Assembly: GCA_964188305.1 (NCBI GenBank)
Contig: OZ076889.1
Strand: one strand, 5' to 3'
Length of the DNA: 64,000 nucleotides
Source of the DNA: Podarcis bocagei
Taxonomy: Eukaryota
Below the pieces are notes generated by a model. The model saw only the letters and a list, made by a program, of their open reading frames with translations. It had not been told where the DNA came from and searched no databases. This document shows positions 17,009 to 56,508 of this stretch, in pieces (position 1 is the first letter of the stretch; each line of letters begins with the position of its first letter). The position numbers and the translations under genes were made by a program.

Positions 17009-17601
17009 CAGTGGTTCCCAACCTTTTTCTGGCCATGCCCCCACCTAAGGTAAAGGGACCCCTGACCATTAGGTCCAGTCGTGACCGACTCTGGGGTTGC
17101 GGCGCTCATCTCGCTTTATTGGCCGAGGGAGCCAGCGTACAGCTTCCGGGTCATGTGGCCAGCATGACTAAGCTGCTTCTGGTGAACCAGAGCAGCACAC
17201 AGAAACGCCGTTTACCTTCCCACTGGAGTGGTACCTATTTATCTACTTGCACTTTGATGTGCTTTTGAACTGCTAGTTTGGCAGGAGCAGGGACCCAGCA
17301 ACGGGAGCTCACCCTGTCACAGGGATTCGAACCGCCGACCTTCTGATCAGCATGTCCTAGGCTCTGTGGTTTAACCCACAGAGCCACCTGCGTCCCAATG
17401 CCCCCACCTAAGCATCTCTAAAATCCTGATGCCTGCCCCCTCCCCCCATGACATATCATTCTTATTATTCAAAAAGTGAAGTCCTATTCACGCGGAGGCA
17501 GCCTAAAAGGCCATTCACTGTTAATAACTCATTCTAGAATTTCCCCCATTAAAAATAAATTTGCCCCCCGCGGGACGTGTGCCCCACATTGGGAACCACA
17601 G
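17009..17601. mobile_element. hAT MITE hosting the Sauria SINE
   Basis: TIRs cagtggttcccaa / ttgggaaccacag; perfect 8-bp TSD atctagag at 17001-17008 and 17602-17609. Confidence 0.9.
17050..17397 (-). mobile_element. Sauria SINE, full length, 15-bp TSD
   Basis: tRNA-like head (gggattcgaacc B box), Sauria core gggtcatgtggccagcatgactaagc, ACCTTT-type tail; TSD atgcccccacctaag at 17035-17049 and 17398-17412. Confidence 0.92.
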
Positions 17602-19287: not shown

Positions 19288-20339
19288 TGTAAAAACAAGT
19301 GTGTGAATCATCCTTTTTTTTCTAGCTCCAACAAAGGCTGTAGTCAAAGATTTTCTGAAAATCTCAGTGATTACTATCAAACTGATATTGGCTGGACAAA
19401 TAAAGAAATAATATAGCAAAATTATTTCTGGACTGCAGATGGGATATTGTGTGCTTGACTATTCCTCCATGGGAATGGGGAAGAAATAATCAAAGGTTAA
19501 AAACAAACACACACTAGAAGCCATCTTCTTGACTTCTAAATTTCTGTTTTCGGGTATTATTTTAAAAGTGGAGGAGAATTCAGTCATGTAATTCCCCACG
19601 CAACAGCAGTCTAATGGAAGTATAGTTACCTGGACTTCCTGTTATCTGCTACTGATGGGCTGGGTTTTTATTTTTTCTTATCTATAATCTGAACTTTGTT
19701 TGGCTTTCTTCTTTATTTGGTAACTGGTTTTTAACATTTTGTATGAATTGCTGTGAATCTTTCAAATTGATGTGCACTGTATTGTGAAGGAAAAATGACC
19801 CCCCCCAAAGAGGAAACGTGGAGGTGCCCTGCAAAGTAGGGGGGGAGTTCAATAATGATAGGTTCAAATATTTTAAGACAAGTCCTTTGCACTGGGCCCT
19901 AGATTTCCTAGCCACCCTTTCTTAAACATGAAAAAAGTTTTTGAAAACAACAACTTTGCATTCAAGGCAGTGATCATGCTGCAAAGTGCGAGCCACTCAC
20001 CGTCTTAATTTGCTCAGAGATCTAAATTTGCATCCATTCATACACATTAGCATTTGCAAAGTCTATGCAAATCTGCATCATGAGCCTGTTCCGAGAGTCC
20101 TTTTAAAGACCTAGCAACGCCCTTACTTACGTAGTACTGTAGCATAAAGCTGCGGCGATTGAAAGGAAGCAGTATCGAGCTTTATTTTGTTTTTACCTGC
20201 TTGCTGTGCTTGTTTTAAACTGCGCAGCTCCTTGCTAAGCCCTATACATGGAGAACAGTATACCAGAAGTACAGTTTCCACTTCACAATCCCTCCCCCCA
20301 AAAAGGTGGTTAGAAGCTACACTTTAGAAATAAACGCTG

Positions 20340-21730
20340 GGGTTTCATTCCCCCGTCCCAGAACTTTGGCGGGGCGTTGCTGTTGCCGGAACTGCAACAA
20401 CTTCACTCCGAGCCGCAGCCGCTCGCTTTGGGGCTCGTACGCCCACGTGAGATCCTACCTGGGGGAGCGAGCCCCGTCGAGCAAAGGGGGGGGGCTCGCT
20501 CCCGCAGAAACGCGCCGCGTGCCTGCGTAAAACAAGTGCCTCGCTTTCCCGGTGCCAGATGTGGAAGGCCGATGCGCACGCCGCGTGCGTAAAAACCTTT
20601 ATTTCCTAACCTAACCCCACCCCCAGGGTCCGAGCGTTGTTGGGGGACACAGAGCCTGGATCGGCGGGGGAAGCAAGCGGCGGACCCACGCAGCCGGCGA
20701 GGCTGGCTTTTCCTGTGGCTTGACTTGGGACACTTCTCCCAGTTGGGCGAGGGAGTGCAACGCGCCGAGCTCCGCCCCTTTGCGCGAACTCCCGCTGCCG
20801 CCTGCTCGGCTAAGCCGCCGCTCAGAAGCCTTGCGCTTGGTGGCGAGGCGGGCGGGCGAGCGAGCGAGCGAGCGAGCACATCCCCGAGGGAAGCGGCCAG
20901 GTCGGAGCCCGGGGTCGCCGGGCCGCTCTCCTGCCCTCTCTCCGCGTATGGCTCTCGGCAAGTAAGCGCGCTCGCTCCTCCCTCCTTCCCGGGATCGCCC
21001 GGGCTATCATGCGCGCCTCTCGGTGGGCTCTCCAGGACAGCTCGCCGGCCAAGTGATCGGTCCCTCCGCGGCGCGCTCGGCTGCCCCTTCCTTTTTAATG
21101 CGCGGCTCTTTCGGCCGGCCGCCTCTCCCGCCGCCGCTGCCCAGCCCGCCGGCTCCCTGGCTCTGCCCCCTGTGACGGAGATGCGCGCGGCGGGGTGGTT
21201 CAAGCGGCGGGCGGCGGAGGCGGCTGCCGCCCGGCTGCTGGTGTGGCTCCTCTTGGGCGCCTGGGCTGTGGAGCTGCGCTGCGCCCTGGCCGACTTCACG
21301 CTGGAGAACGAGGTGCACTCGAGCTTCATCCACCGGAGGCTCCGCAGCCAGGAGCGCCGGGAGATGCAGCGGGAGATCCTCTCCATCCTGGGCTTGCCCC
21401 ACCGGCCGAGGCCCCATCTGCACGGCAAGCACAACTCGGCGCCCATGTTCATGCTGGACCTCTACAATGCCATGTCGGTGGAGGAGGAGGGCGCCGGAGC
21501 CAGCGACGGCGGAGAGGGCTACTCGTACCCTTACAAGCCCATCTTCAGCACCCAGGGGCCGCCCCTGGCCAGCCTGCAGGACAGCAACTTCCTCACCGAG
21601 GCCGACATGGTCATGAGCTTCGTCAACATGGGTGAGTCGCTTGGCTGGCAGGGAGAGGGAGAAGGGGCTTGGGGAACACTTGGGAGATGGAAGGACACTT
21701 CCTCGTGTGGCCTCCGGGAAGCCAGGAGGA
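20340..21730. promoter_or_regulatory. CpG island covering the BMP7 promoter, 5' UTR and exon 1
   Basis: Sharp rise in GC and CpG density against a CpG-depleted background; GC boxes (gggcgg/ccgccc) and a (GCGA)n run near 20857-20878. TSS not determinable from sequence. Confidence 0.88.
21181..21631 (+). CDS. BMP7: Bone morphogenetic protein 7, coding exon 1 (signal peptide plus N-terminal prodomain; 150 codons + 1 nt, phase-1 intron)
   Basis: Translation contains ...LRCALA|[61 protein letters not shown]...[37 protein letters not shown], matching the BMP7 prodomain (more specifically than BMP5/6/8). It ends at G|GTGAGT (donor at 21632), the position where vertebrate BMP7 exon 1 ends. ATG context ggagATGc. 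Confidence 0.96.
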
Positions 21731-38858: not shown

Positions 38859-39688
38859 GAAATATCAACAACCTCAGATATGCAGATGACACAACCTTGA
38901 TGGCAGAAAGTGAGGAGGAATTAAAGAACCTTTTAATGAGGGTGAAAGAGGAGAGCGCAAAATATGGTCTGAAGCTCAACATCAAAAAAACGAAGATCAA
39001 GGCCACTGGTCCCATCACCTCCTGGCAAATAGAAGGGGAAGAAATGGAGGCAGTGAGAGATTTTACTTTCTTGGGCTCCATGATCACTTTCTTGGGCTCC
39101 ATGATCACTGCAGATGGCGACAGCAGTCACGAAATTAAAAGACGCCTGCTCCTTGGGAGAAAGGCGATGGTAAACCTAGACAACATCTTAAAAAGCAGAG
39201 ACATCACCTTGCCAACAAAGGTCCGTATAGTTAAAGCCATGGTTTTCCCGGTAGTAATGTATGGAAGCAAGAGCTGGACCATAAAGAAGGCTGATCGCCG
39301 AATAATTGATGCTTTTGAATTATGGTGCTGGAGGAGACTCTTGAGAGTCCCATGGACTGCAAGAAGATCAAACGTATCCATTCTGAAGGAAATCAGCCCT
39401 GAGTGCTCACTGGAAGGACAGATCCTGAAGCTGCTGCTCCAATACTTTGGCCACCTCATGAGAAGAGAAGAGAAGACTCCCTGGAAAAGACCCTGTTGGG
39501 AAAGATTGAGGGCACAAGGAGAAGGGGACAACGGAGGACGAGATGGTTGGACAGTGTTCTCGAAGCTACAAACATGAGTCTGACCAAACTGCGGGAGGCA
39601 GTGGAAGACAGGAGTGCCTGGCGTGCTCTGGTCCATGGGGTCATGAAGAGTCGGACACGACTAAATGACTAAATAACAACAACAACAA
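38859..39688 (+). mobile_element. BovB (RTE-clade) LINE, 5'-truncated, with 10-bp TSD
   Basis: NINNLRYADDTTLMAESEEELK...GLKLNIKKTKI...IDAFELWCWRRLLRVPWTARRSN; (CAA)n tail; TSD accctttttg at 38849-38858 and 39689-39698. Confidence 0.95.
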
Positions 39689-48404: not shown

Positions 48405-48790
48405 TTAAAAAGGTAAAGGACCTCTGACAGTTAAGTCCAGTTGCAGACGACTCCGGGGTTGCGGCGCTCATCTCGCTTTACAGGCCAAGGGAGCTGGCGT
48501 TTGTCCACAGACAGTTTTTCCGGGTCATGTGGCCAGCATGACTAAGCCGCTTCTGGTGCAATGGAACACCGAAACCAGAGCAGCGCACAGAAATGCCGTT
48601 AACCTTCCCGCCTGAGCAGTACCTATTTATCTACTCGCACTTTTTTGGGTGTGCTTTTGAAGTGCTAGGTTGCCAGGAGCTGGGACTGAGCAATGGGAGC
48701 TCACCCCGTTGTGGGGATTCGAACCGGCGACCTTCTGATTGGGAAGCCCAAGAGGCTCAGTGGTTTAGACCACAACGCCACCCGCATCCC
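48405..48790 (-). mobile_element. Sauria SINE, full length, 12-bp TSD
   Basis: Same core as 17050; TSD atatacatgttt at 48393-48404 and 48791-48802. Confidence 0.92.
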
Positions 48791-49073
48791 ATATACATGT
48801 TTACTTATAGGCAAATCTCACTGCGTCCCGGCACCCATTATCTCTGATCAGGTGGGGCTGATAGGCGTTGCATTTCAACAACATCTGCAGAGCCCCAGAG
48901 GTTGGCTGCTCTTGCCCTAGTAACTGTGTTTATGATGACTGTGCTAAGCAACACTTGAAGGATGCTGTAAGGTACAGATGGCCAAGCTTTGCCATGACAT
49001 AAGGTAAAAGAAAATAAGGAAATTGTAGAAGCTCGTGGTTAGTTTTCGTTGTGTGCGCTATCTCTCTTTTAAA

Positions 49074-49242
49074 NNNNNNNNNNNNNNNNNNNNNNNNNNN
49101 NNNNNNNNNNNNNNNNNNNNNNNNNNNNNNNNNNNNNNNNNNNNNNNNNNNNNNNNNNNNNNNNNNNNNNNNNNNNNNNNNNNNNNNNNNNNNNNNNNNN
49201 NNNNNNNNNNNNNNNNNNNNNNNNNNNNNNNNNNNNNNNNNN
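49074..49242. other. Assembly gap (169 N)
   Basis: Run of N counted directly. Confidence 0.99.
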
Positions 49243-49420
49243 ATCCCAGATAGAAGGAGTGTACCGTTCTTCGGTCAAGGGTATACGATAGCTGCGCTCC
49301 CCTGCTAGAACCTCCAAACAAGCTCAAGGTCCATTTGTAGGAGAACGTAGGGTAGTCAAGCTTCCAAGACTCCAGACACATCCAAGTAAGGCGCTGCATG
49401 TGGCAGTTTGCCATTCTTTT
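49243..49420 (+). ncRNA. RN7SK: 7SK snRNA copy, 3' half (5' half presumably in the N gap); probably a retrocopy
   Basis: tcttcggtcaagggtatacgatagctgcgctcccctgctagaacctccaaacaagctcaaggtccatttgtaggagaacgtagggtagtcaagcttccaagactccagacacatcc...ggcgctgcatgtggcagtttgccattctttt matches the 3' half of vertebrate 7SK, including the 3' hairpin and oligo-U end. An A-rich tract follows. Confidence 0.92.
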
Positions 49421-50012
49421 AAAAGAAAAATAAATAAATAAATAAAGATTCAGAGCATTTTGATTTGATGCATCTCCTTAAATGCTTGAAATGCAGCTTG
49501 ACATAAGCAGGGCAACTTCACCCACTCCAGCCCTTCTCTCGAGGAGGCTTTTCAGAGCACAAGCTGCCTTCGGTTTCATGCGGCTAATGACACCAAATGG
49601 TTTTGAATCTCCTGTTTTATTGGAACAGGTGTAGCGCCTGCCATCTGCGCCAATGCCTTCCTTGGCCGGCAAGCAGAGCACTGTTTTGGTTCAATGGATT
49701 TAAAAGTCTCCTGAGAGCAAAGCAGCGAAAGAATGCAGAAAGCGTCTGGCAAAGGAAAAGCACTTTAAGTAATGAGCTTTGTCACTCAAGGCTTCTAGTA
49801 AATTGCCTTCAAATATTTCCAAACTATTTTTGGGGTGGAGGTGGGGGGTGGCAGAGTTGGGGACTGGAGACGTGGAAGGGAAGAAAAGAGAGAGAAATGC
49901 CTGCAGAGTTTTAAGTTTCTGTTGCTCTATGAAATCTTCTTTATCTTCTTGCAGTAGCTTCCAAGTGAGTTTGTTGGCCGGTTGATTTCAACCTTATGCT
50001 GCGTCCGTCAGC

Positions 50013-50023
50013 TGTGTGTGTGT

Positions 50024-50057
<34 letters not shown>
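50013..50057. repeat. (TG)n microsatellite
   Basis: Read directly. Confidence 0.95.
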
Positions 50058-50059
<2 letters not shown>

Positions 50060-51639
50060 GAGGAGATACTTTTAATACTTTGATAAGAATATAAAGCTGT
50101 TGCCGTGTTTCGGTGATGGGAATTCTGCTGATAAGAATAGGAGAAAGACCAAAACAAGATTCTTCAGAGCAGTTTAAAAAAAAAAAGGAAAAAGGAAAAG
50201 GTAATTTTGCAACTCTAACAGACAAAGATCATGCTGAGTCTGCGGTTAGAGAAACCACCAGCACCCTTCATCGTGTCCGACCTGGCAGGGTTGAGTCAAT
50301 CTGTCTGGAACACTCTTAACAGCTAAAGGGCCTGAGGGGTGGGAATGGATCTTTCTCCTTTAGTGCACAACCTTGTAGTATCAAGTCTGTTTGACTTGGG
50401 AAGCTAAGCTGGCTTTCTGGAATGGAAAATCCTCTTAGTTTTATTATGACAGGAAACTCTTAAAAACCTTTAAAGCACTGTCCGCTCCTCCCCTCCCCCC
50501 AAGTTGGCACGCCTTTACTTGGAAAGCTTTAATGAGAGAACAACCCTCAAATAGATAGCTTTATATAATTATGCAGGTGCTCATTAAAAAATGTCTTGTT
50601 TCTCCCTCTGCCCAGCTGGTTTCCTTTCTCTTTGTCCCACTGGAGACTTTTATCCAATCATGTATACAGTAGCAACACTTGTAGAGCTGAGGTTGAAGAT
50701 GCTGAAAAGCAATAAAGAGAAGTCCCTGAATGATCCTTCAACCCCCTCCCCCTGCTTTTTCCTTTGCCTCTTATTTTCACCTTGCAGTCTGAGTAGGCAA
50801 TACTTCTATCTGTGTGTCGTATGAGTCAGAAAAAAAGGAACATTGTGTCTCCACTGGGGCAGAGATAGGATGGCCTTTCTTGTCCGGCGAGTTCGTAATT
50901 ATGTGATTCGGAATGTAAATTGTATGGATGTATTACGAACTCAGGCCTGGATTCCCACAGAAATTCTCCTCCAGCTTGGAATGTAAAGCGAGGTTCTGTA
51001 CATAAACTTCTGGTAAGTTACTAAATGTGCATTTACAGATTGTTATTATTAGTGCATTTCAAGGTAGAAAATAACACCTCTGGGAATTTAGGCTCAGTTT
51101 GTAATGCCTCCAAATTCTAGGGTTTCCATGTCGCAAACCAGAGATCTGTCTGGTGCAGCTCAGAGTGTCTTTTAAGATTTCCTGATGTATCAAGAGTTGG
51201 AGTGGGTGTACTCTCTCCTGTCTGTTCCTTGCCCAGTCCAGACATTTCTTCCCTTGCTCATATCCCAATTTGCCTGCTGTAACAAGCCGGACTCAAGGTG
51301 TGGCACACTGCAAACGGAGAGGTGAATTGATGACAAGGTCAGAAGGAAGAGCTGGCTGAGATAAAATACTAAGGGTTCAGGGCAGATATTTTGGCTGCAC
51401 CCAGGCTGCTCAAACCATTGTACCCAACAGTGGCCTTTATACTTGCAGATTTGTCAATTGCCATGCAGATTTCCCATGTTAATTCCACATATCTCTCTAC
51501 CTTCTGGTTTACTTTGATCATTTTCTTGTGATAGGGAACATAGAAAGAAAATGCCCTTGGCCACGGACAGTTGAACTATAGCAATGAAAACAATAGGTTG
51601 CATATCTCACCTGTTTTCCAATTAAAAGGGTGGGCTACT

Positions 51640-51915
51640 TTCCCAGGTTGATGAGACCCATTTGCCCCTCTACAGCATGTGCAGAAACCGCCTTCTTGAC
51701 TCTTGGACCCACTGTTGGTCTTGTCCATTCAACCCACTGGAGTCTGTCTATTTGCATGCAGGGAAAGCCACTAACTCACAGAGGGTTTGAGACCCATTGG
51801 CTGCCCTCACCCGGTTTAGTCTGCTAGTCAAAGCCGTTTTCTGGGGTGTGGCTGCTGTTGCATGCTGGCAGCTTCCAGGAGCCACAGCTGAGAGCTGAGT
51901 GCAGGGCGGGAACAA
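51640..51915 (-). mobile_element. Probable RTE-type 5' UTR fragment
   Basis: gagggtttgagacccattggctgccctcacccggtttag resembles 5' regions of vertebrate RTE elements (from memory only). Confidence 0.4.
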
Positions 51916-52095
51916 AAGTGCCCATACATATTTTGGATGAACAATAATATGTTAGGTTTTTTTTATTTTGCTCTTTGAATGGTCATTGCTGAAGTTCTAC
52001 GAGAAGTCAAAAGTCACAATTTTCTACTGGATAATAGAAATTGGTAGTCTGGGATGGCGTTATGCCTTGAGACATTTGTGTGGAAGGCAATTAAT

Positions 52096-53625: not shown

Positions 53626-53973
53626 ACAAAAGGGGCCTTCTGCTGATCAGAAGGTCGGCGGTTCGAATCCCCACGATGGAGTGAGCTCCCGTCGCTCTGT
53701 CCCAGCTCCTACAACCTAGCAGTACAAAAGCATGCCAGCATGAGTAGATAAATAGGTACTGCTGTGGTGGGAAGGTAAACAGCATTTCCATGTGCTCTGG
53801 TTTCCATCAAGGTGTTCCATTGTGCCAGAAGCGGTTTAGTCATGCTGGCCACATGACCCGGAAAGCTGTCTGTGGACAAACGTCGACTCCCTCAGCCTGA
53901 AAGCGAGATGAGCGCCACAACCCACTAGTCACCTTTGCCTGGACTTAACCATCCCAGGGTCCTTTATCTTACC
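53626..53973 (+). mobile_element. Sauria SINE, 5' end shortened, 12-bp TSD
   Basis: ggttcgaatcc B box and gtcatgctggccacatgacccgg core; TSD ttacttagcact at 53614-53625 and 53974-53985. Confidence 0.9.
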
Positions 53974-54491: not shown

Positions 54492-55528
54492 AAAGGGTGC
54501 TCATCAATGGTTCCTCTTCATCCTGGAGAAGAGTGACTAGTGGGGTGCCACAGGGTTCTGTCTTGGGCCCGGTCTTATTTAACATCTTTATCAATGACTT
54601 GGATGATGGACTCAAGGGCATCCTGATCAAATTTGCAGATGACACCAAACTGGGAGGGGTGGCTAACACCCCAGAGGACAGGATCACACTTCAAAACGAC
54701 CTTGACAGATTAGAGAACTGGGCAAAAACAAACAAAATGAATTTTAACAGGGAGAAATGTAAAGTATTGCACTTGGGCAAAAAAAATGAGAGGCACAAAT
54801 ACAAGATGGGTGACACCTGGCTTGAGAGCAGTACATGTGAAAAGGATCTAGGAGTCTTGGTTGACCACAAACTTGACATGAGCCAACAGTGTGACGCGGC
54901 AGCTAAAAAAGCCAATGCAATTCTGGGCTGCATCAATAGGAGTATAGCATCTAGATCAAGGGAAGTAATAGTGCCACTGTATTCTGCTCTGGTCAGACCA
55001 CACCTGGAGTACTGTGTCCAGTTCTGGGCACCACAATTCAAGAAGGACACTGACAAACTGGAACGTGTCCAGAGGAGGGCAACCAAAATGGTCAAAGGCC
55101 TGGAAACGATGCCTTATGAGGAACGGCTAAGGGAGCTGGGCATGTTTAGCCTGGAGAAGAGGAGGTTAAGGGGTGATATGATAGCCATGTTCAAATATAT
55201 AAAAGGATGTCACATAGAGGAGGGAGAAAGGTTGTTTTCTGCTGCTCCAGAGAAGCGGACACGGAGCAATGGATCCAAACTACAAGAAAGAAGATTCCAC
55301 CTAAACATTAGGAAGAACTTCCTGACAGTAAGAGCTGTTCGACAGTGGAATTTGCTGCCAAGGAGTGTGGTGGAGTCTCCTACTTTGGAGGTCTTTAAGC
55401 AGAGGCTTGACAACCATATGTCAGGAGTGCTCTGATGGTGTTTCCTGCTTGGCAGGGGGTTGGACTCGATGGCCCTTGTGGTCTCTTCCAACTCTGTGAT
55501 TCTATGATTCTATGATTCTATGATTCTA
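54492..55528 (+). mobile_element. CR1 LINE, 5'-truncated, young (uninterrupted 312-codon RT C-terminal frame)
   Basis: [11 protein letters not shown]...FINDLD...KFADDTKL...[15 protein letters not shown]...RLRGDMI; 3' UTR ends in (ATTCTATG)n octamer repeats. Confidence 0.96.
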
Positions 55529-55788: not shown

Positions 55789-56508
55789 TACAGATAGGTA
55801 GCCGTGTTGGTCTGCCATAGTCAAAATAAAAAAATTCCTTCCAGTAGCACCTTAAAGACCAACTAAGTTAGTTCTTGGTATGAGCTTTCGTGTGCATGCA
55901 CACTTCTTCAGATACACTGAAACAGAAGTTGCCAGATCCTTCTATATAGTGAGAAGGTGGGGAGGGGTATTACTCAGAAGGGTGGTGGGAATGGGAGATT
56001 GGCAGATGAGCCTGTTGACGACTCTTAACGACTGCAATAGGTCTTACAGGAAAAGGCAAGGGGTGAGAAGGTGAGAAATGGCTTAGTATAATGAGATAAG
56101 AATCCAATGTCTTTGTTCAGACCAGGTCTCTCCATGGTTTTAAGTTTGGTAATGAGTTGCAATTCAGCAGCTTCTCTTTCCAGTCTATTTCTGAAATTCC
56201 TTTGTAGTAAAACAGCTACTTTGAGATCTTGTATAGAATGTCCTGGGAGATTGAAGTGTTCTCCTACTGGTTTCTCTGTTTTGTGATTCTTGATATCAGA
56301 TTTATGTCCGTTTATTCTTTGGCGTAAGGTTTGGCCTGTTTGTCCAATATAGAGAGCTGAAGGACACTGTTGGCATTTGATGGCATACACAATGTTAGAC
56401 GATGAGCAATTAAATAGTCCCGAGATGGTATGTGTGATGCTGTTGGGGCCAGTAATGGTGTTGTCCGGGTGTATGTGGCAGCAAAGTTGGCATCTGGGTT
56501 TATTGCAG
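55789..56508 (-). mobile_element. Penelope-like retroelement, 5'-truncated, with GIY-YIG endonuclease C-terminus and 3' pLTR region
   Basis: Minus strand reads CNKPRCQLCCHIHPDNTITGP...FNCSSSNIVYAIKCQQCPSALYIGQTGQTLRQRINGHKSDI...VGEHFNLPGHS...REAAE...LKTMERPGLNKD, a PLE-type GIY-YIG domain. A hammerhead motif lies downstream. Confidence 0.92.
55878..55915 (-). ncRNA. Minimal type I hammerhead ribozyme within the Penelope-like element
   Basis: Minus strand GUAU-CUGAAGA-A-GUGUGCAUGCACAC-GAAA-GC-UC-AUAC: stem I GUAU/AUAC, core CUGANGA and GAAA, palindromic stem II, stem III reduced to self-complementary AGCU, UC cleavage site. Confidence 0.82.

What the first reader, a model, noticed from the sequence alone, without database searches (positions are those of the whole stretch)
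49064..49446. Near-intact 7SK snRNA copy inside BMP7 intron 1, with its 5' half hidden in a gap
Seen: 178 nt matching the 3' half of 7SK, in sense orientation, start exactly at the end of a 169-N gap and finish with the 3' hairpin, TTTT and an A-rich tract. Known: the missing 5' part of 7SK is about 154 nt (human sequence, from memory), and 7SK is the Pol III RNA that sequesters P-TEFb via HEXIM/LARP7. Inference: the gap fits the full 5' half plus about 15 nt. The left flank ends ...ctttt|aaa, like an L1-endonuclease TTTT/AA site, so aaa plus about 15 N could be a TSD of aaaagaaaaataaataa. That favours a young, full-length LINE-made retrocopy; I see no clear PSE upstream. If it is transcribed within BMP7 pre-mRNA, it would place 7SK protein-binding hairpins on a nascent developmental transcript.
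Basis: partly seen in the sequence, partly recalled or inferred. Interest (0 to 1): 0.72.

Follow-up and report, generated by a model that had tools for sequence, protein, structure and literature searches.

The report
7SK RNA retrocopy in BMP7 intron
A dead-on-arrival copy of the small nuclear RNA 7SK was pasted by a retrotransposon enzyme into the first intron of a lizard BMP7 gene; this is an ordinary, well-known kind of RNA pseudogene, probably recent, and nothing suggests it does anything.

Summary
Rfam's 7SK model matches 49263-49419 (+) at 140 bits (E 8e-37), covering model positions 172-331 of 331. By eye, 7SK-like letters run on to the gap edge at 49243.

The copy ends in four T and is followed directly by the longest A-rich tract in the window (49421-49446). 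It lies sense to BMP7, 27.6 kb downstream of exon 1.

It is not a 7SK gene:
- No PSE or octamer lies in the roughly 400 visible bases upstream.
- The chicken and mammalian gene sits between GSTA3 and ICK, not in BMP7.
- The copy has two deletions against conserved model positions and one broken pair in the 3' hairpin.

The best reading is a LINE-1-type retropseudogene. Contig lengths in public runs of close relatives, laid on the right flank only, fit an empty site in two sister taxa. They also fit a branch at exactly 49442|49443 in a run of the nearest organism. This is arithmetic, not letters seen.

The scan's earlier notes report other snRNA retrocopies in this genome. Ordinary; low interest.

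The parts
21181..21631 (+). BMP7 exon 1 coding part (start codon to GTGAGT donor); sets the gene's strand and shows the 7SK copy is intronic and in sense
   Evidence: Pfam TGFb_propeptide E 4e-32; translation; sequence with donor
48410..48791 (.). tRNA-derived SINE copy in the left flank, right edge about 48791; used as a landmark for the contig arithmetic
   Evidence: two other copies in the window at 77-81% identity; alignment shows similarity ending at about 48791
49067..49073 (+). TTTT then AAA at the end of the left flank: possible L1-endonuclease target (TT/AAAA type) and first three letters of the left target-site duplication
   Evidence: sequence; inference only, because the junction itself is in the gap
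49074..49242 (.). assembly gap, 169 N, length estimated; may hold the rest of the left duplication and up to about 151 nt of the 7SK 5' part. Not read, not filled
49243..49262 (+). 20 letters that look like 7SK around nt 150-171, outside the covariance-model alignment
   Evidence: sequence; resemblance judged from memory of human 7SK, not tested
49263..49419 (+). 7SK 3' half: linker, SL3, linker, SL4. One-base deletion between 49288 and 49289, two-base deletion between 49322 and 49323, A-A mismatch 49389/49413
   Evidence: Rfam RF00100, 140.2 bits, model 172-331
49417..49420 (+). four T: the Pol III terminator / U-tail of the template RNA, kept in the copy
   Evidence: sequence; last model positions
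49421..49443 (+). A-rich tail of the retrocopy (A runs broken by one G and by TAAA units)
   Evidence: right limit inferred from the X1 contig end
49444..49458 (+). proposed right copy of the target-site duplication (starts AAAG ATTCAG...); length unknown, about 7-20 nt
   Evidence: inference from the match of 49443-49446 to 49070-49073 and the X1 contig ending at 49443

Best explanation
This is a processed (retro)pseudogene of 7SK snRNA. A 7SK transcript with its full U-tail was reverse-transcribed at a nick made by a LINE-1-type endonuclease at a TTTT/AAAG site in BMP7 intron 1. The A-rich tail came either from an early template switch from the LINE RNA's own A-rich tail or from an oligoadenylated 7SK molecule. 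Because 7SK uses a type 3 Pol III promoter that lies wholly upstream of the gene, the copy arrived without a promoter and is silent, except as part of the BMP7 intron, which is spliced out. Shown here: 7SK identity of the 3' half, the tail, no promoter motifs in the visible flank, the intronic sense position, and a single-copy right flank. Inferred: the LINE-1 mechanism, the duplication starting at 49444, full length (about 0.55), and a recent, lineage-restricted insertion (about 0.6).
For: (1) The 7SK model hit scores 140 bits and ends at the last model position with four T. (2) The window's longest A-rich tract starts at the very next base. (3) There is no PSE consensus within 3 mismatches and no octamer between 48.7 and 49.07 kb. 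At the estimated gap length the TATA and PSE positions (-31..-25 and -67..-46 in chicken, PMC2235858) would fall in visible sequence, and that sequence shows neither. (4) The functional 7SK gene of chicken and mammals lies between GSTA3 and ICK, and chicken has only one promoter-bearing copy beside several pseudogenes (PMC2235858); this locus is BMP7. (5) There are two deletions against conserved model positions and a broken SL4 pair. (6) The left flank ends in TTTT/AAA, and the four letters 49070-49073 equal 49443-49446. (7) Reads laid on the right flank only: the X1 contig ends at 49443. In this data set contigs end at the last base shared before a branch, as checked on the heterozygous SNPs 50946-51014, so 49443 is exactly where a filled and an empty allele would part. 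The X3 and X7 contigs run 319 and 326 letters left of 49455. On an empty site that puts their ends 28 and 35 nt inside the SINE whose edge is at 48791. Unique contigs run the same distance (29-35 nt) into the high-copy repeat at 51666. (8) All 6 CpGs of the 7SK part are kept in a CpG-poor region, which fits a young copy. (9) The right flank is single copy (table 2), so this is not a 7SK-LINE chimera with a long LINE part. (10) snRNA pseudogenes followed by poly(A), flanked by duplications and L1-like cleavage sites, are described together with the two models for their tails (PMC4476161). 7SK pseudogenes made by L1 are known (PMC5322556; bioRxiv 10.1101/2025.02.02.635956).
Against: The left junction, the left duplication and the whole 5' part are hidden in the gap, so the hallmark pair of duplications is not seen. 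The presence/absence evidence is contig-length arithmetic; the overhanging letters were not shown, and the tool skipped 49421-49454 as repeat. An impure tail (one G, TAAA units) is unusual for a very recent insertion unless it was copied from a LINE tail. In Anolis, no U6 pseudogene of the poly(A) class was found (PMC4476161), so this structure may be uncommon in lizards.
Confidence: 0.8

Rival explanations
1. It is a 5'-truncated retrocopy, or the scaffold is misjoined. The gap then holds little or no further 7SK sequence, or the left and right contigs are not true neighbours.
For: The gap length is only an estimate (program's note). LINE-made copies are often 5'-truncated. Nothing shows any 7SK letter left of 49243. 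No duplicated target is visible in the left flank beyond three A.
Against: The contig breaks inside 7SK-like sequence at about model position 152. A copy truncated exactly at a contig end would be a coincidence. Short RNA templates are usually copied in full. The empty-site arithmetic for X3 and X7 places their contig ends at the SINE of the left flank, which indirectly supports the two flanks being neighbours. The gap estimate fits 151 nt plus a duplication.
Confidence: 0.15
2. It is the lizard's real, Pol III-transcribed 7SK gene, or a second active one. Its promoter would be hidden in a gap that is in truth much longer than 169 bases.
For: The 3' half is very well preserved: 140 bits, SL3 intact, all CpGs kept, four-T terminator. 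The X3 and X7 contigs could cross a 7SK copy without a branch if it were the only 7SK locus in the genome.
Against: There is no PSE, TATA or octamer in the visible flank. Across amniotes the true gene keeps the GSTA3-7SK-ICK position (PMC2235858). The copy has deletions against conserved model positions and a broken SL4 pair. An A-rich tail abuts the terminator. X1 shows a branch exactly at the tail boundary.
Confidence: 0.04
3. It is a tailless-type insertion into a pre-existing A-rich site. The A-rich tract 49421-49446 would then be target DNA and not a tail.
For: The tract is impure (one G, TAAA units), as old genomic A-rich DNA often is. 7SK is not normally polyadenylated and gives many tailless pseudogenes in human (PMC5322556). 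The left flank ends in AAA.
Against: Tailless pseudogenes are 3'-truncated at internal single-stranded sites (PMC5322556), whereas this copy keeps its full 3' end. If the tract were target DNA, filled and empty alleles would share sequence leftward to about 49415. The X1 contig would then end there and not at 49443.
Confidence: 0.1

Closest known systems
Human and other mammalian 7SK retropseudogenes made by LINE-1
   Same: A 7SK-derived sequence without the upstream type 3 promoter, dispersed away from the parental locus, with signs of target-primed reverse transcription (PMC5322556; 10.1101/2025.02.02.635956).
   Different: Many human copies are 3'-truncated and tailless. This one keeps the complete 3' end with its U-tail and carries an A-rich tail. 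The host is a lizard.
Poly(A)-extended U6/U6atac and other snRNA processed pseudogenes (Doucet et al. 2015, PMC4476161)
   Same: A full 3' end of a non-polyadenylated small RNA followed by an A tract, flanked by duplications at an L1-like cleavage site. The same two models apply: an early template switch from the L1 tail, or recruitment of an adenylated RNA.
   Different: The template is 7SK, not U6. In Anolis that class was not found for U6 (0 of 41 analysed copies). Here the duplications are not visible.
Chicken 7SK pseudogenes on chromosomes 1, 2 and 4 (PMC2235858)
   Same: Sauropsid 7SK-like copies that lack a TATA box in their 5' flank, beside one functional gene at the conserved GSTA3-ICK locus.
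   Different: Their structure (tails, duplications, age) is not described in that paper, so no closer comparison is possible.
Functional vertebrate 7SK gene (RN7SK)
   Same: The sequence and fold of SL3 and SL4 and the terminator.
   Different: No PSE, TATA or DSE seen, a different locus, private deletions, a broken SL4 pair, and an A-rich tail.

Membership tests
7SK RNA sequence family (Rfam RF00100) | Score above the family's gathering cut-off against the covariance model | tested here: met
   140.2 bits against 35, E 8e-37, model 172-331; only the 3' half is visible
7SK RNA sequence family (Rfam RF00100) | 5' hairpin SL1 (HEXIM/Tat-binding part) | not testable with these tools
   It would lie in the 169-N gap, which was not to be filled or looked up
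7SK RNA sequence family (Rfam RF00100) | 3' hairpin SL4 plus U-tail (LARP7-binding part) | tested here: met
   All pairs standard except A49389-A49413; four T at 49417-49420
Functional type 3 Pol III 7SK gene | PSE at about -67..-46 and TATA at about -31..-25 (chicken, human, bovine; PMC2235858) | tested here: not met
   No PSE consensus within 3 mismatches in the visible flank. The letters at the expected places, given the gap estimate, show no PSE or TATA. Caveat: a much longer true gap would hide them
Functional type 3 Pol III 7SK gene | Distal element with an octamer at about -220 | tested here: not met
   The eight ATGCAAAT sites in the window lie elsewhere; none falls between 48.7 and 49.07 kb
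Functional type 3 Pol III 7SK gene | Conserved amniote position between GSTA3 and ICK | tested here: not met
   The locus is 27.6 kb into BMP7 intron 1; synteny as stated in PMC2235858
LINE-1-type processed pseudogene of a small RNA | A-rich tail directly after the RNA's 3' end | tested here: met
   49421-49446, the longest A-rich tract of the window, starts one base after the four T
LINE-1-type processed pseudogene of a small RNA | Target-site duplications on both sides | tested here: inconclusive
   The left copy would lie in the gap; only TAAA (49070-49073 equal to 49443-49446) can be matched
LINE-1-type processed pseudogene of a small RNA | Endonuclease target of the TT/AAAA type at the insertion point | tested here: inconclusive
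   TTTT/AAA sits at the edge of the left flank, but the junction with the insert is not visible
LINE-1-type processed pseudogene of a small RNA | Empty orthologous site in relatives or other individuals | tested here: inconclusive
   The contig-end arithmetic fits empty sites in organisms B and E and a branch in A; the letters were not seen

The most novel reading that the evidence does not exclude
The copy is a full-length 7SK retrocopy that is still segregating in a lacertid lizard population, which would show ongoing trans-mobilisation of 7SK by lizard L1. Because it lies in sense within BMP7 intron 1, it would place complete HEXIM- and LARP7-binding hairpins on nascent BMP7 pre-mRNA and measurably alter Pol II pausing or elongation on that gene in carriers. 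The probability given is for the functional part. Polymorphism alone I put at about 0.4, with interest about 0.3.
Probability: 0.02. Interest if true: 0.6.

Novelty: new member of a known kind. Interest (0 to 1): 0.15.

Why it matters
It matters little on its own. It adds one more case showing that LINE-1-type machinery in a lacertid lizard copies nuclear Pol III RNAs, here in the poly(A)-extended form that was not seen for U6 in Anolis. If the insertion is truly polymorphic, it is a handy presence/absence marker and a sign of current retrotransposition in trans. For annotation, it should be masked as a 7SK pseudogene, not called as the 7SK gene, and it explains why the assembly broke here. 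No effect on BMP7 is indicated.

Tried and rejected
True gene: rejected for lack of PSE, TATA and octamer, the wrong locus, and the tail.

A PSE-like string at 48995-49010 looked by eye somewhat like the human 7SK PSE as I remember it. It fails the published consensus at 3 mismatches or fewer. It also lies about 72 nt from the only TATA-like letters, with no 7SK start at the right distance, so I dropped it.

TTTTAAA at the flank edge as a TATA box: its position would fit a start site about 25 nt into the gap, but no PSE lies 20-40 nt upstream of it, so I dropped it.

7SK-LINE chimera: rejected because the right flank from 49455 on is single copy in three runs.

Direct repeats of 6 nt or more between the last 60 nt of the left flank and the 80 nt after the four T: none.

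Searches of the scan's notes for 7SK in this genome: none.

Run X8 gave no unique contigs on the stretch, so it gave no verdict.

No RNA holder of the right flank was listed, so expression was not tested.

The free-energy fold of the 3' half alone is not better than shuffles (z -0.36). That is uninformative for a fragment; the covariance model is the relevant test.

Rule compliance:
- The gap letters were not looked up.
- The 7SK piece was not sent to the reads tools.
- I worked beside it, from 49421 (read laying) and 49447 (look-up of sequencing runs), with 2,500 letters laid.

Full report
**What is there**

A scan of the whole 64-kb window against Rfam gives a single hit at gathering threshold. 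It is 7SK RNA (RF00100) at 49263-49419 on the + strand, model positions 172-331 of 331, 140.2 bits against a cut-off of 35, E 8e-37. A more permissive scan of 48600-49900 gives the same hit and nothing in the left flank.

- The long SL3 helix is fully paired. SL4 has one non-standard pair, A49389 with A49413.
- Against the model there is a one-base deletion between 49288 and 49289, at a conserved G.
- There is also a two-base deletion in the SL3 loop, between 49322 and 49323.
- The 20 letters between the gap edge (49243) and the start of the alignment read like 7SK around nt 150-171. That comparison is to my memory of the human RNA, so it is a lead and not a test.
- The copy ends with four T (49417-49420). 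The next base starts a 26-nt A-rich tract (49421-46), the longest of 13 such tracts on this strand in 64 kb.

**Context**

The only gap in the window is 49074-49242. A CpG-rich region around 20-22 kb holds a + strand reading frame with a TGF-beta propeptide match (E 4e-32). Its text is BMP7-like (judged from memory of human BMP7). The coding part runs from the ATG at 21181 to 21631 and is followed by GTGAGT. Short motifs of the next exon were not found further on in the window. The 7SK piece is therefore 27.6 kb into intron 1 and in sense.

The left flank holds a tRNA-derived SINE at 48410-48791, with two other copies in the window. Earlier notes of this scan call the genome a lacertid lizard. 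They list other snRNA retrocopies (U1, U5/L1, U6) and young L1 in it. These are unchecked notes and I used them only as context.

**The gap**

What can be said:

- The right contig breaks inside 7SK-like sequence, so some further 7SK sequence is likely.
- 151 model positions are missing and the estimate of 169 leaves about 18, which is the size of a target-site duplication.
- The estimate is only an estimate. I put a full-length copy at about 0.55.

**Gene or retrocopy**

7SK genes have type 3 Pol III promoters that lie wholly upstream. In chicken the TATA box is at -31 to -25, the PSE at -67 to -46 and an octamer at about -220. The one functional gene sits between GSTA3 and ICK, as in mammals, while further 7SK-like copies on other chromosomes lack a TATA box (PMC2235858).

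Here no PSE consensus (up to 3 mismatches) and no octamer lie in the roughly 400 visible bases upstream of the gap. With the estimated gap length, the letters at the expected TATA and PSE places show neither. The locus is BMP7, not GSTA3-ICK. Together with the A-rich tail, the two deletions and the broken SL4 pair, this makes a real gene very unlikely (about 0.04). A copy made from the RNA cannot carry the external promoter, so it is dead on arrival.

**Mechanism**

The left flank ends in TTTT followed by AAA, which is the top-strand form of the L1 endonuclease site (TT/AAAA type). snRNA pseudogenes that keep a full 3' end and are followed by poly(A) are described in the literature. They have duplications and L1-like cleavage sites. 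Two models exist for the tail: an early template switch from the L1 RNA's tail, or recruitment of an already adenylated RNA (PMC4476161). 7SK pseudogenes made by L1 are well known in mammals (PMC5322556; 10.1101/2025.02.02.635956). In Anolis, U6 pseudogenes were chimeras or 3'-truncated, with none in the poly(A) class, so this form may be less common in lizards. The tail here is impure (one G, TAAA units). If the insertion is recent, that favours a tail copied from a LINE RNA; this is inference.

**Presence or absence in relatives**

I searched public runs with the right flank only (49447-51446). It is held by seven coded organisms: A shares 0.93 of the sampled words, B to D share 0.76-0.80, and E to G share about 0.6. 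These are taxa within roughly 0.2-1.6% of the window.

I then laid contigs of X1 (A), X3 (B), X7 (E) and X8 (F) on 49421-51920. That stretch lies beside the human-like 7SK piece and well away from the gap. The tool skipped 49421-49454 as repeat, so all alignments start at 49455, but its table of contig pieces gives how far each contig hangs over.

First I fixed the convention. Around four heterozygous SNPs in X1 (50946-51014), the flanking contigs end at 50945 and start at 51015. Contigs in this data therefore stop at the last base shared before a branch. For minus-strand records, the record's first letter sits at the right end.

- **X1.** The contig over 49455-50001 has 12 more letters on the left, so it ends at 49443. 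If the empty allele reads TTTT (to 49070) and then AAAG ATTCAG (from 49444), the filled and empty alleles share sequence leftward to exactly 49443 and differ at 49442. The observed end is the predicted branch point. A length change in the TAAA repeat would branch near 49431 instead. A chance SNP at 49442 cannot be excluded.
- **X3 and X7.** These contigs run 319 and 326 letters to the left of 49455. On an empty site they end at the equivalents of 48763 and 48756, which is 28 and 35 nt inside the SINE whose edge is at 48791. That is the same distance (29-35 nt) by which unique contigs in the same runs enter the high-copy repeat at 51666. On a filled site they would have to cross the 3' half of 7SK, including a 63-nt run identical to the family consensus, without meeting a branch from the parental gene, and then stop at no particular place inside the gap.
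- **X8.** This run gave no unique contigs.

I therefore infer, at about 0.6, that the copy is absent in B and E and that X1 carries both states. The overhanging letters were not shown, so this is arithmetic and not sequence. The same arithmetic gives indirect support that the two flanks are true neighbours.

Keeping all six CpGs in the 7SK part, in a CpG-poor region, fits a young copy. The right flank is single copy, which excludes a chimera with a long LINE part.

**Function**

No RNA run was listed as holding the flank. The copy would be transcribed only as part of the BMP7 intron. The idea that it brings 7SK-binding proteins to nascent BMP7 RNA has no support here. Intronic 7SK pseudogenes are common in mammals without a known effect. 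I give that idea about 0.02.

**Verdict**

This is an ordinary 7SK retropseudogene, a new member of a known kind, probably recent and perhaps polymorphic. Interest is low.

Noticed in passing
window 55878-55915: The scan holds a first-reader note of an intact minimal hammerhead ribozyme here (s1-340341). The Rfam scan of the whole window at gathering threshold listed only 7SK, so no hammerhead family reached its cut-off. I did not run a permissive scan on that spot.
   Followed up: partly
window 54497-55435 (+) and 38897-39577 (+): These reading frames have reverse-transcriptase (RVT_1) matches, E 2e-15 and 0.0035: LINE fragments in the same intron. The clade (L1, L2, CR1 or RTE) was not determined. 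An A-rich tract at 55823-55834 could be the tail of the first one.
   Followed up: no
window 48410-48791, 17047-17397, 53646-53970: Three copies of a tRNA-derived SINE, 77-81% alike, lie in the BMP7 upstream region and intron.
   Followed up: partly
window 51605-51920: This is a very high-copy repeat. Summed contig depth is in the thousands to over 100,000 in all four runs, against 7-26 for the unique flank, with many internal joints between copies.
   Followed up: no
window 50946-51014: Run X1 (nearest organism) carries two haplotypes differing at four sites within 70 bases, and has fixed differences from the window at 51077, 51079 and a 2-base deletion at 50856. It is therefore not the assembled individual or haplotype.
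   Followed up: no
window 20026-20072: Two octamer motifs (ATGCAAAT) in opposite orientation lie 32 bases apart, about 1.1 kb upstream of the BMP7 start codon at the edge of the CpG-rich region.
   Followed up: no
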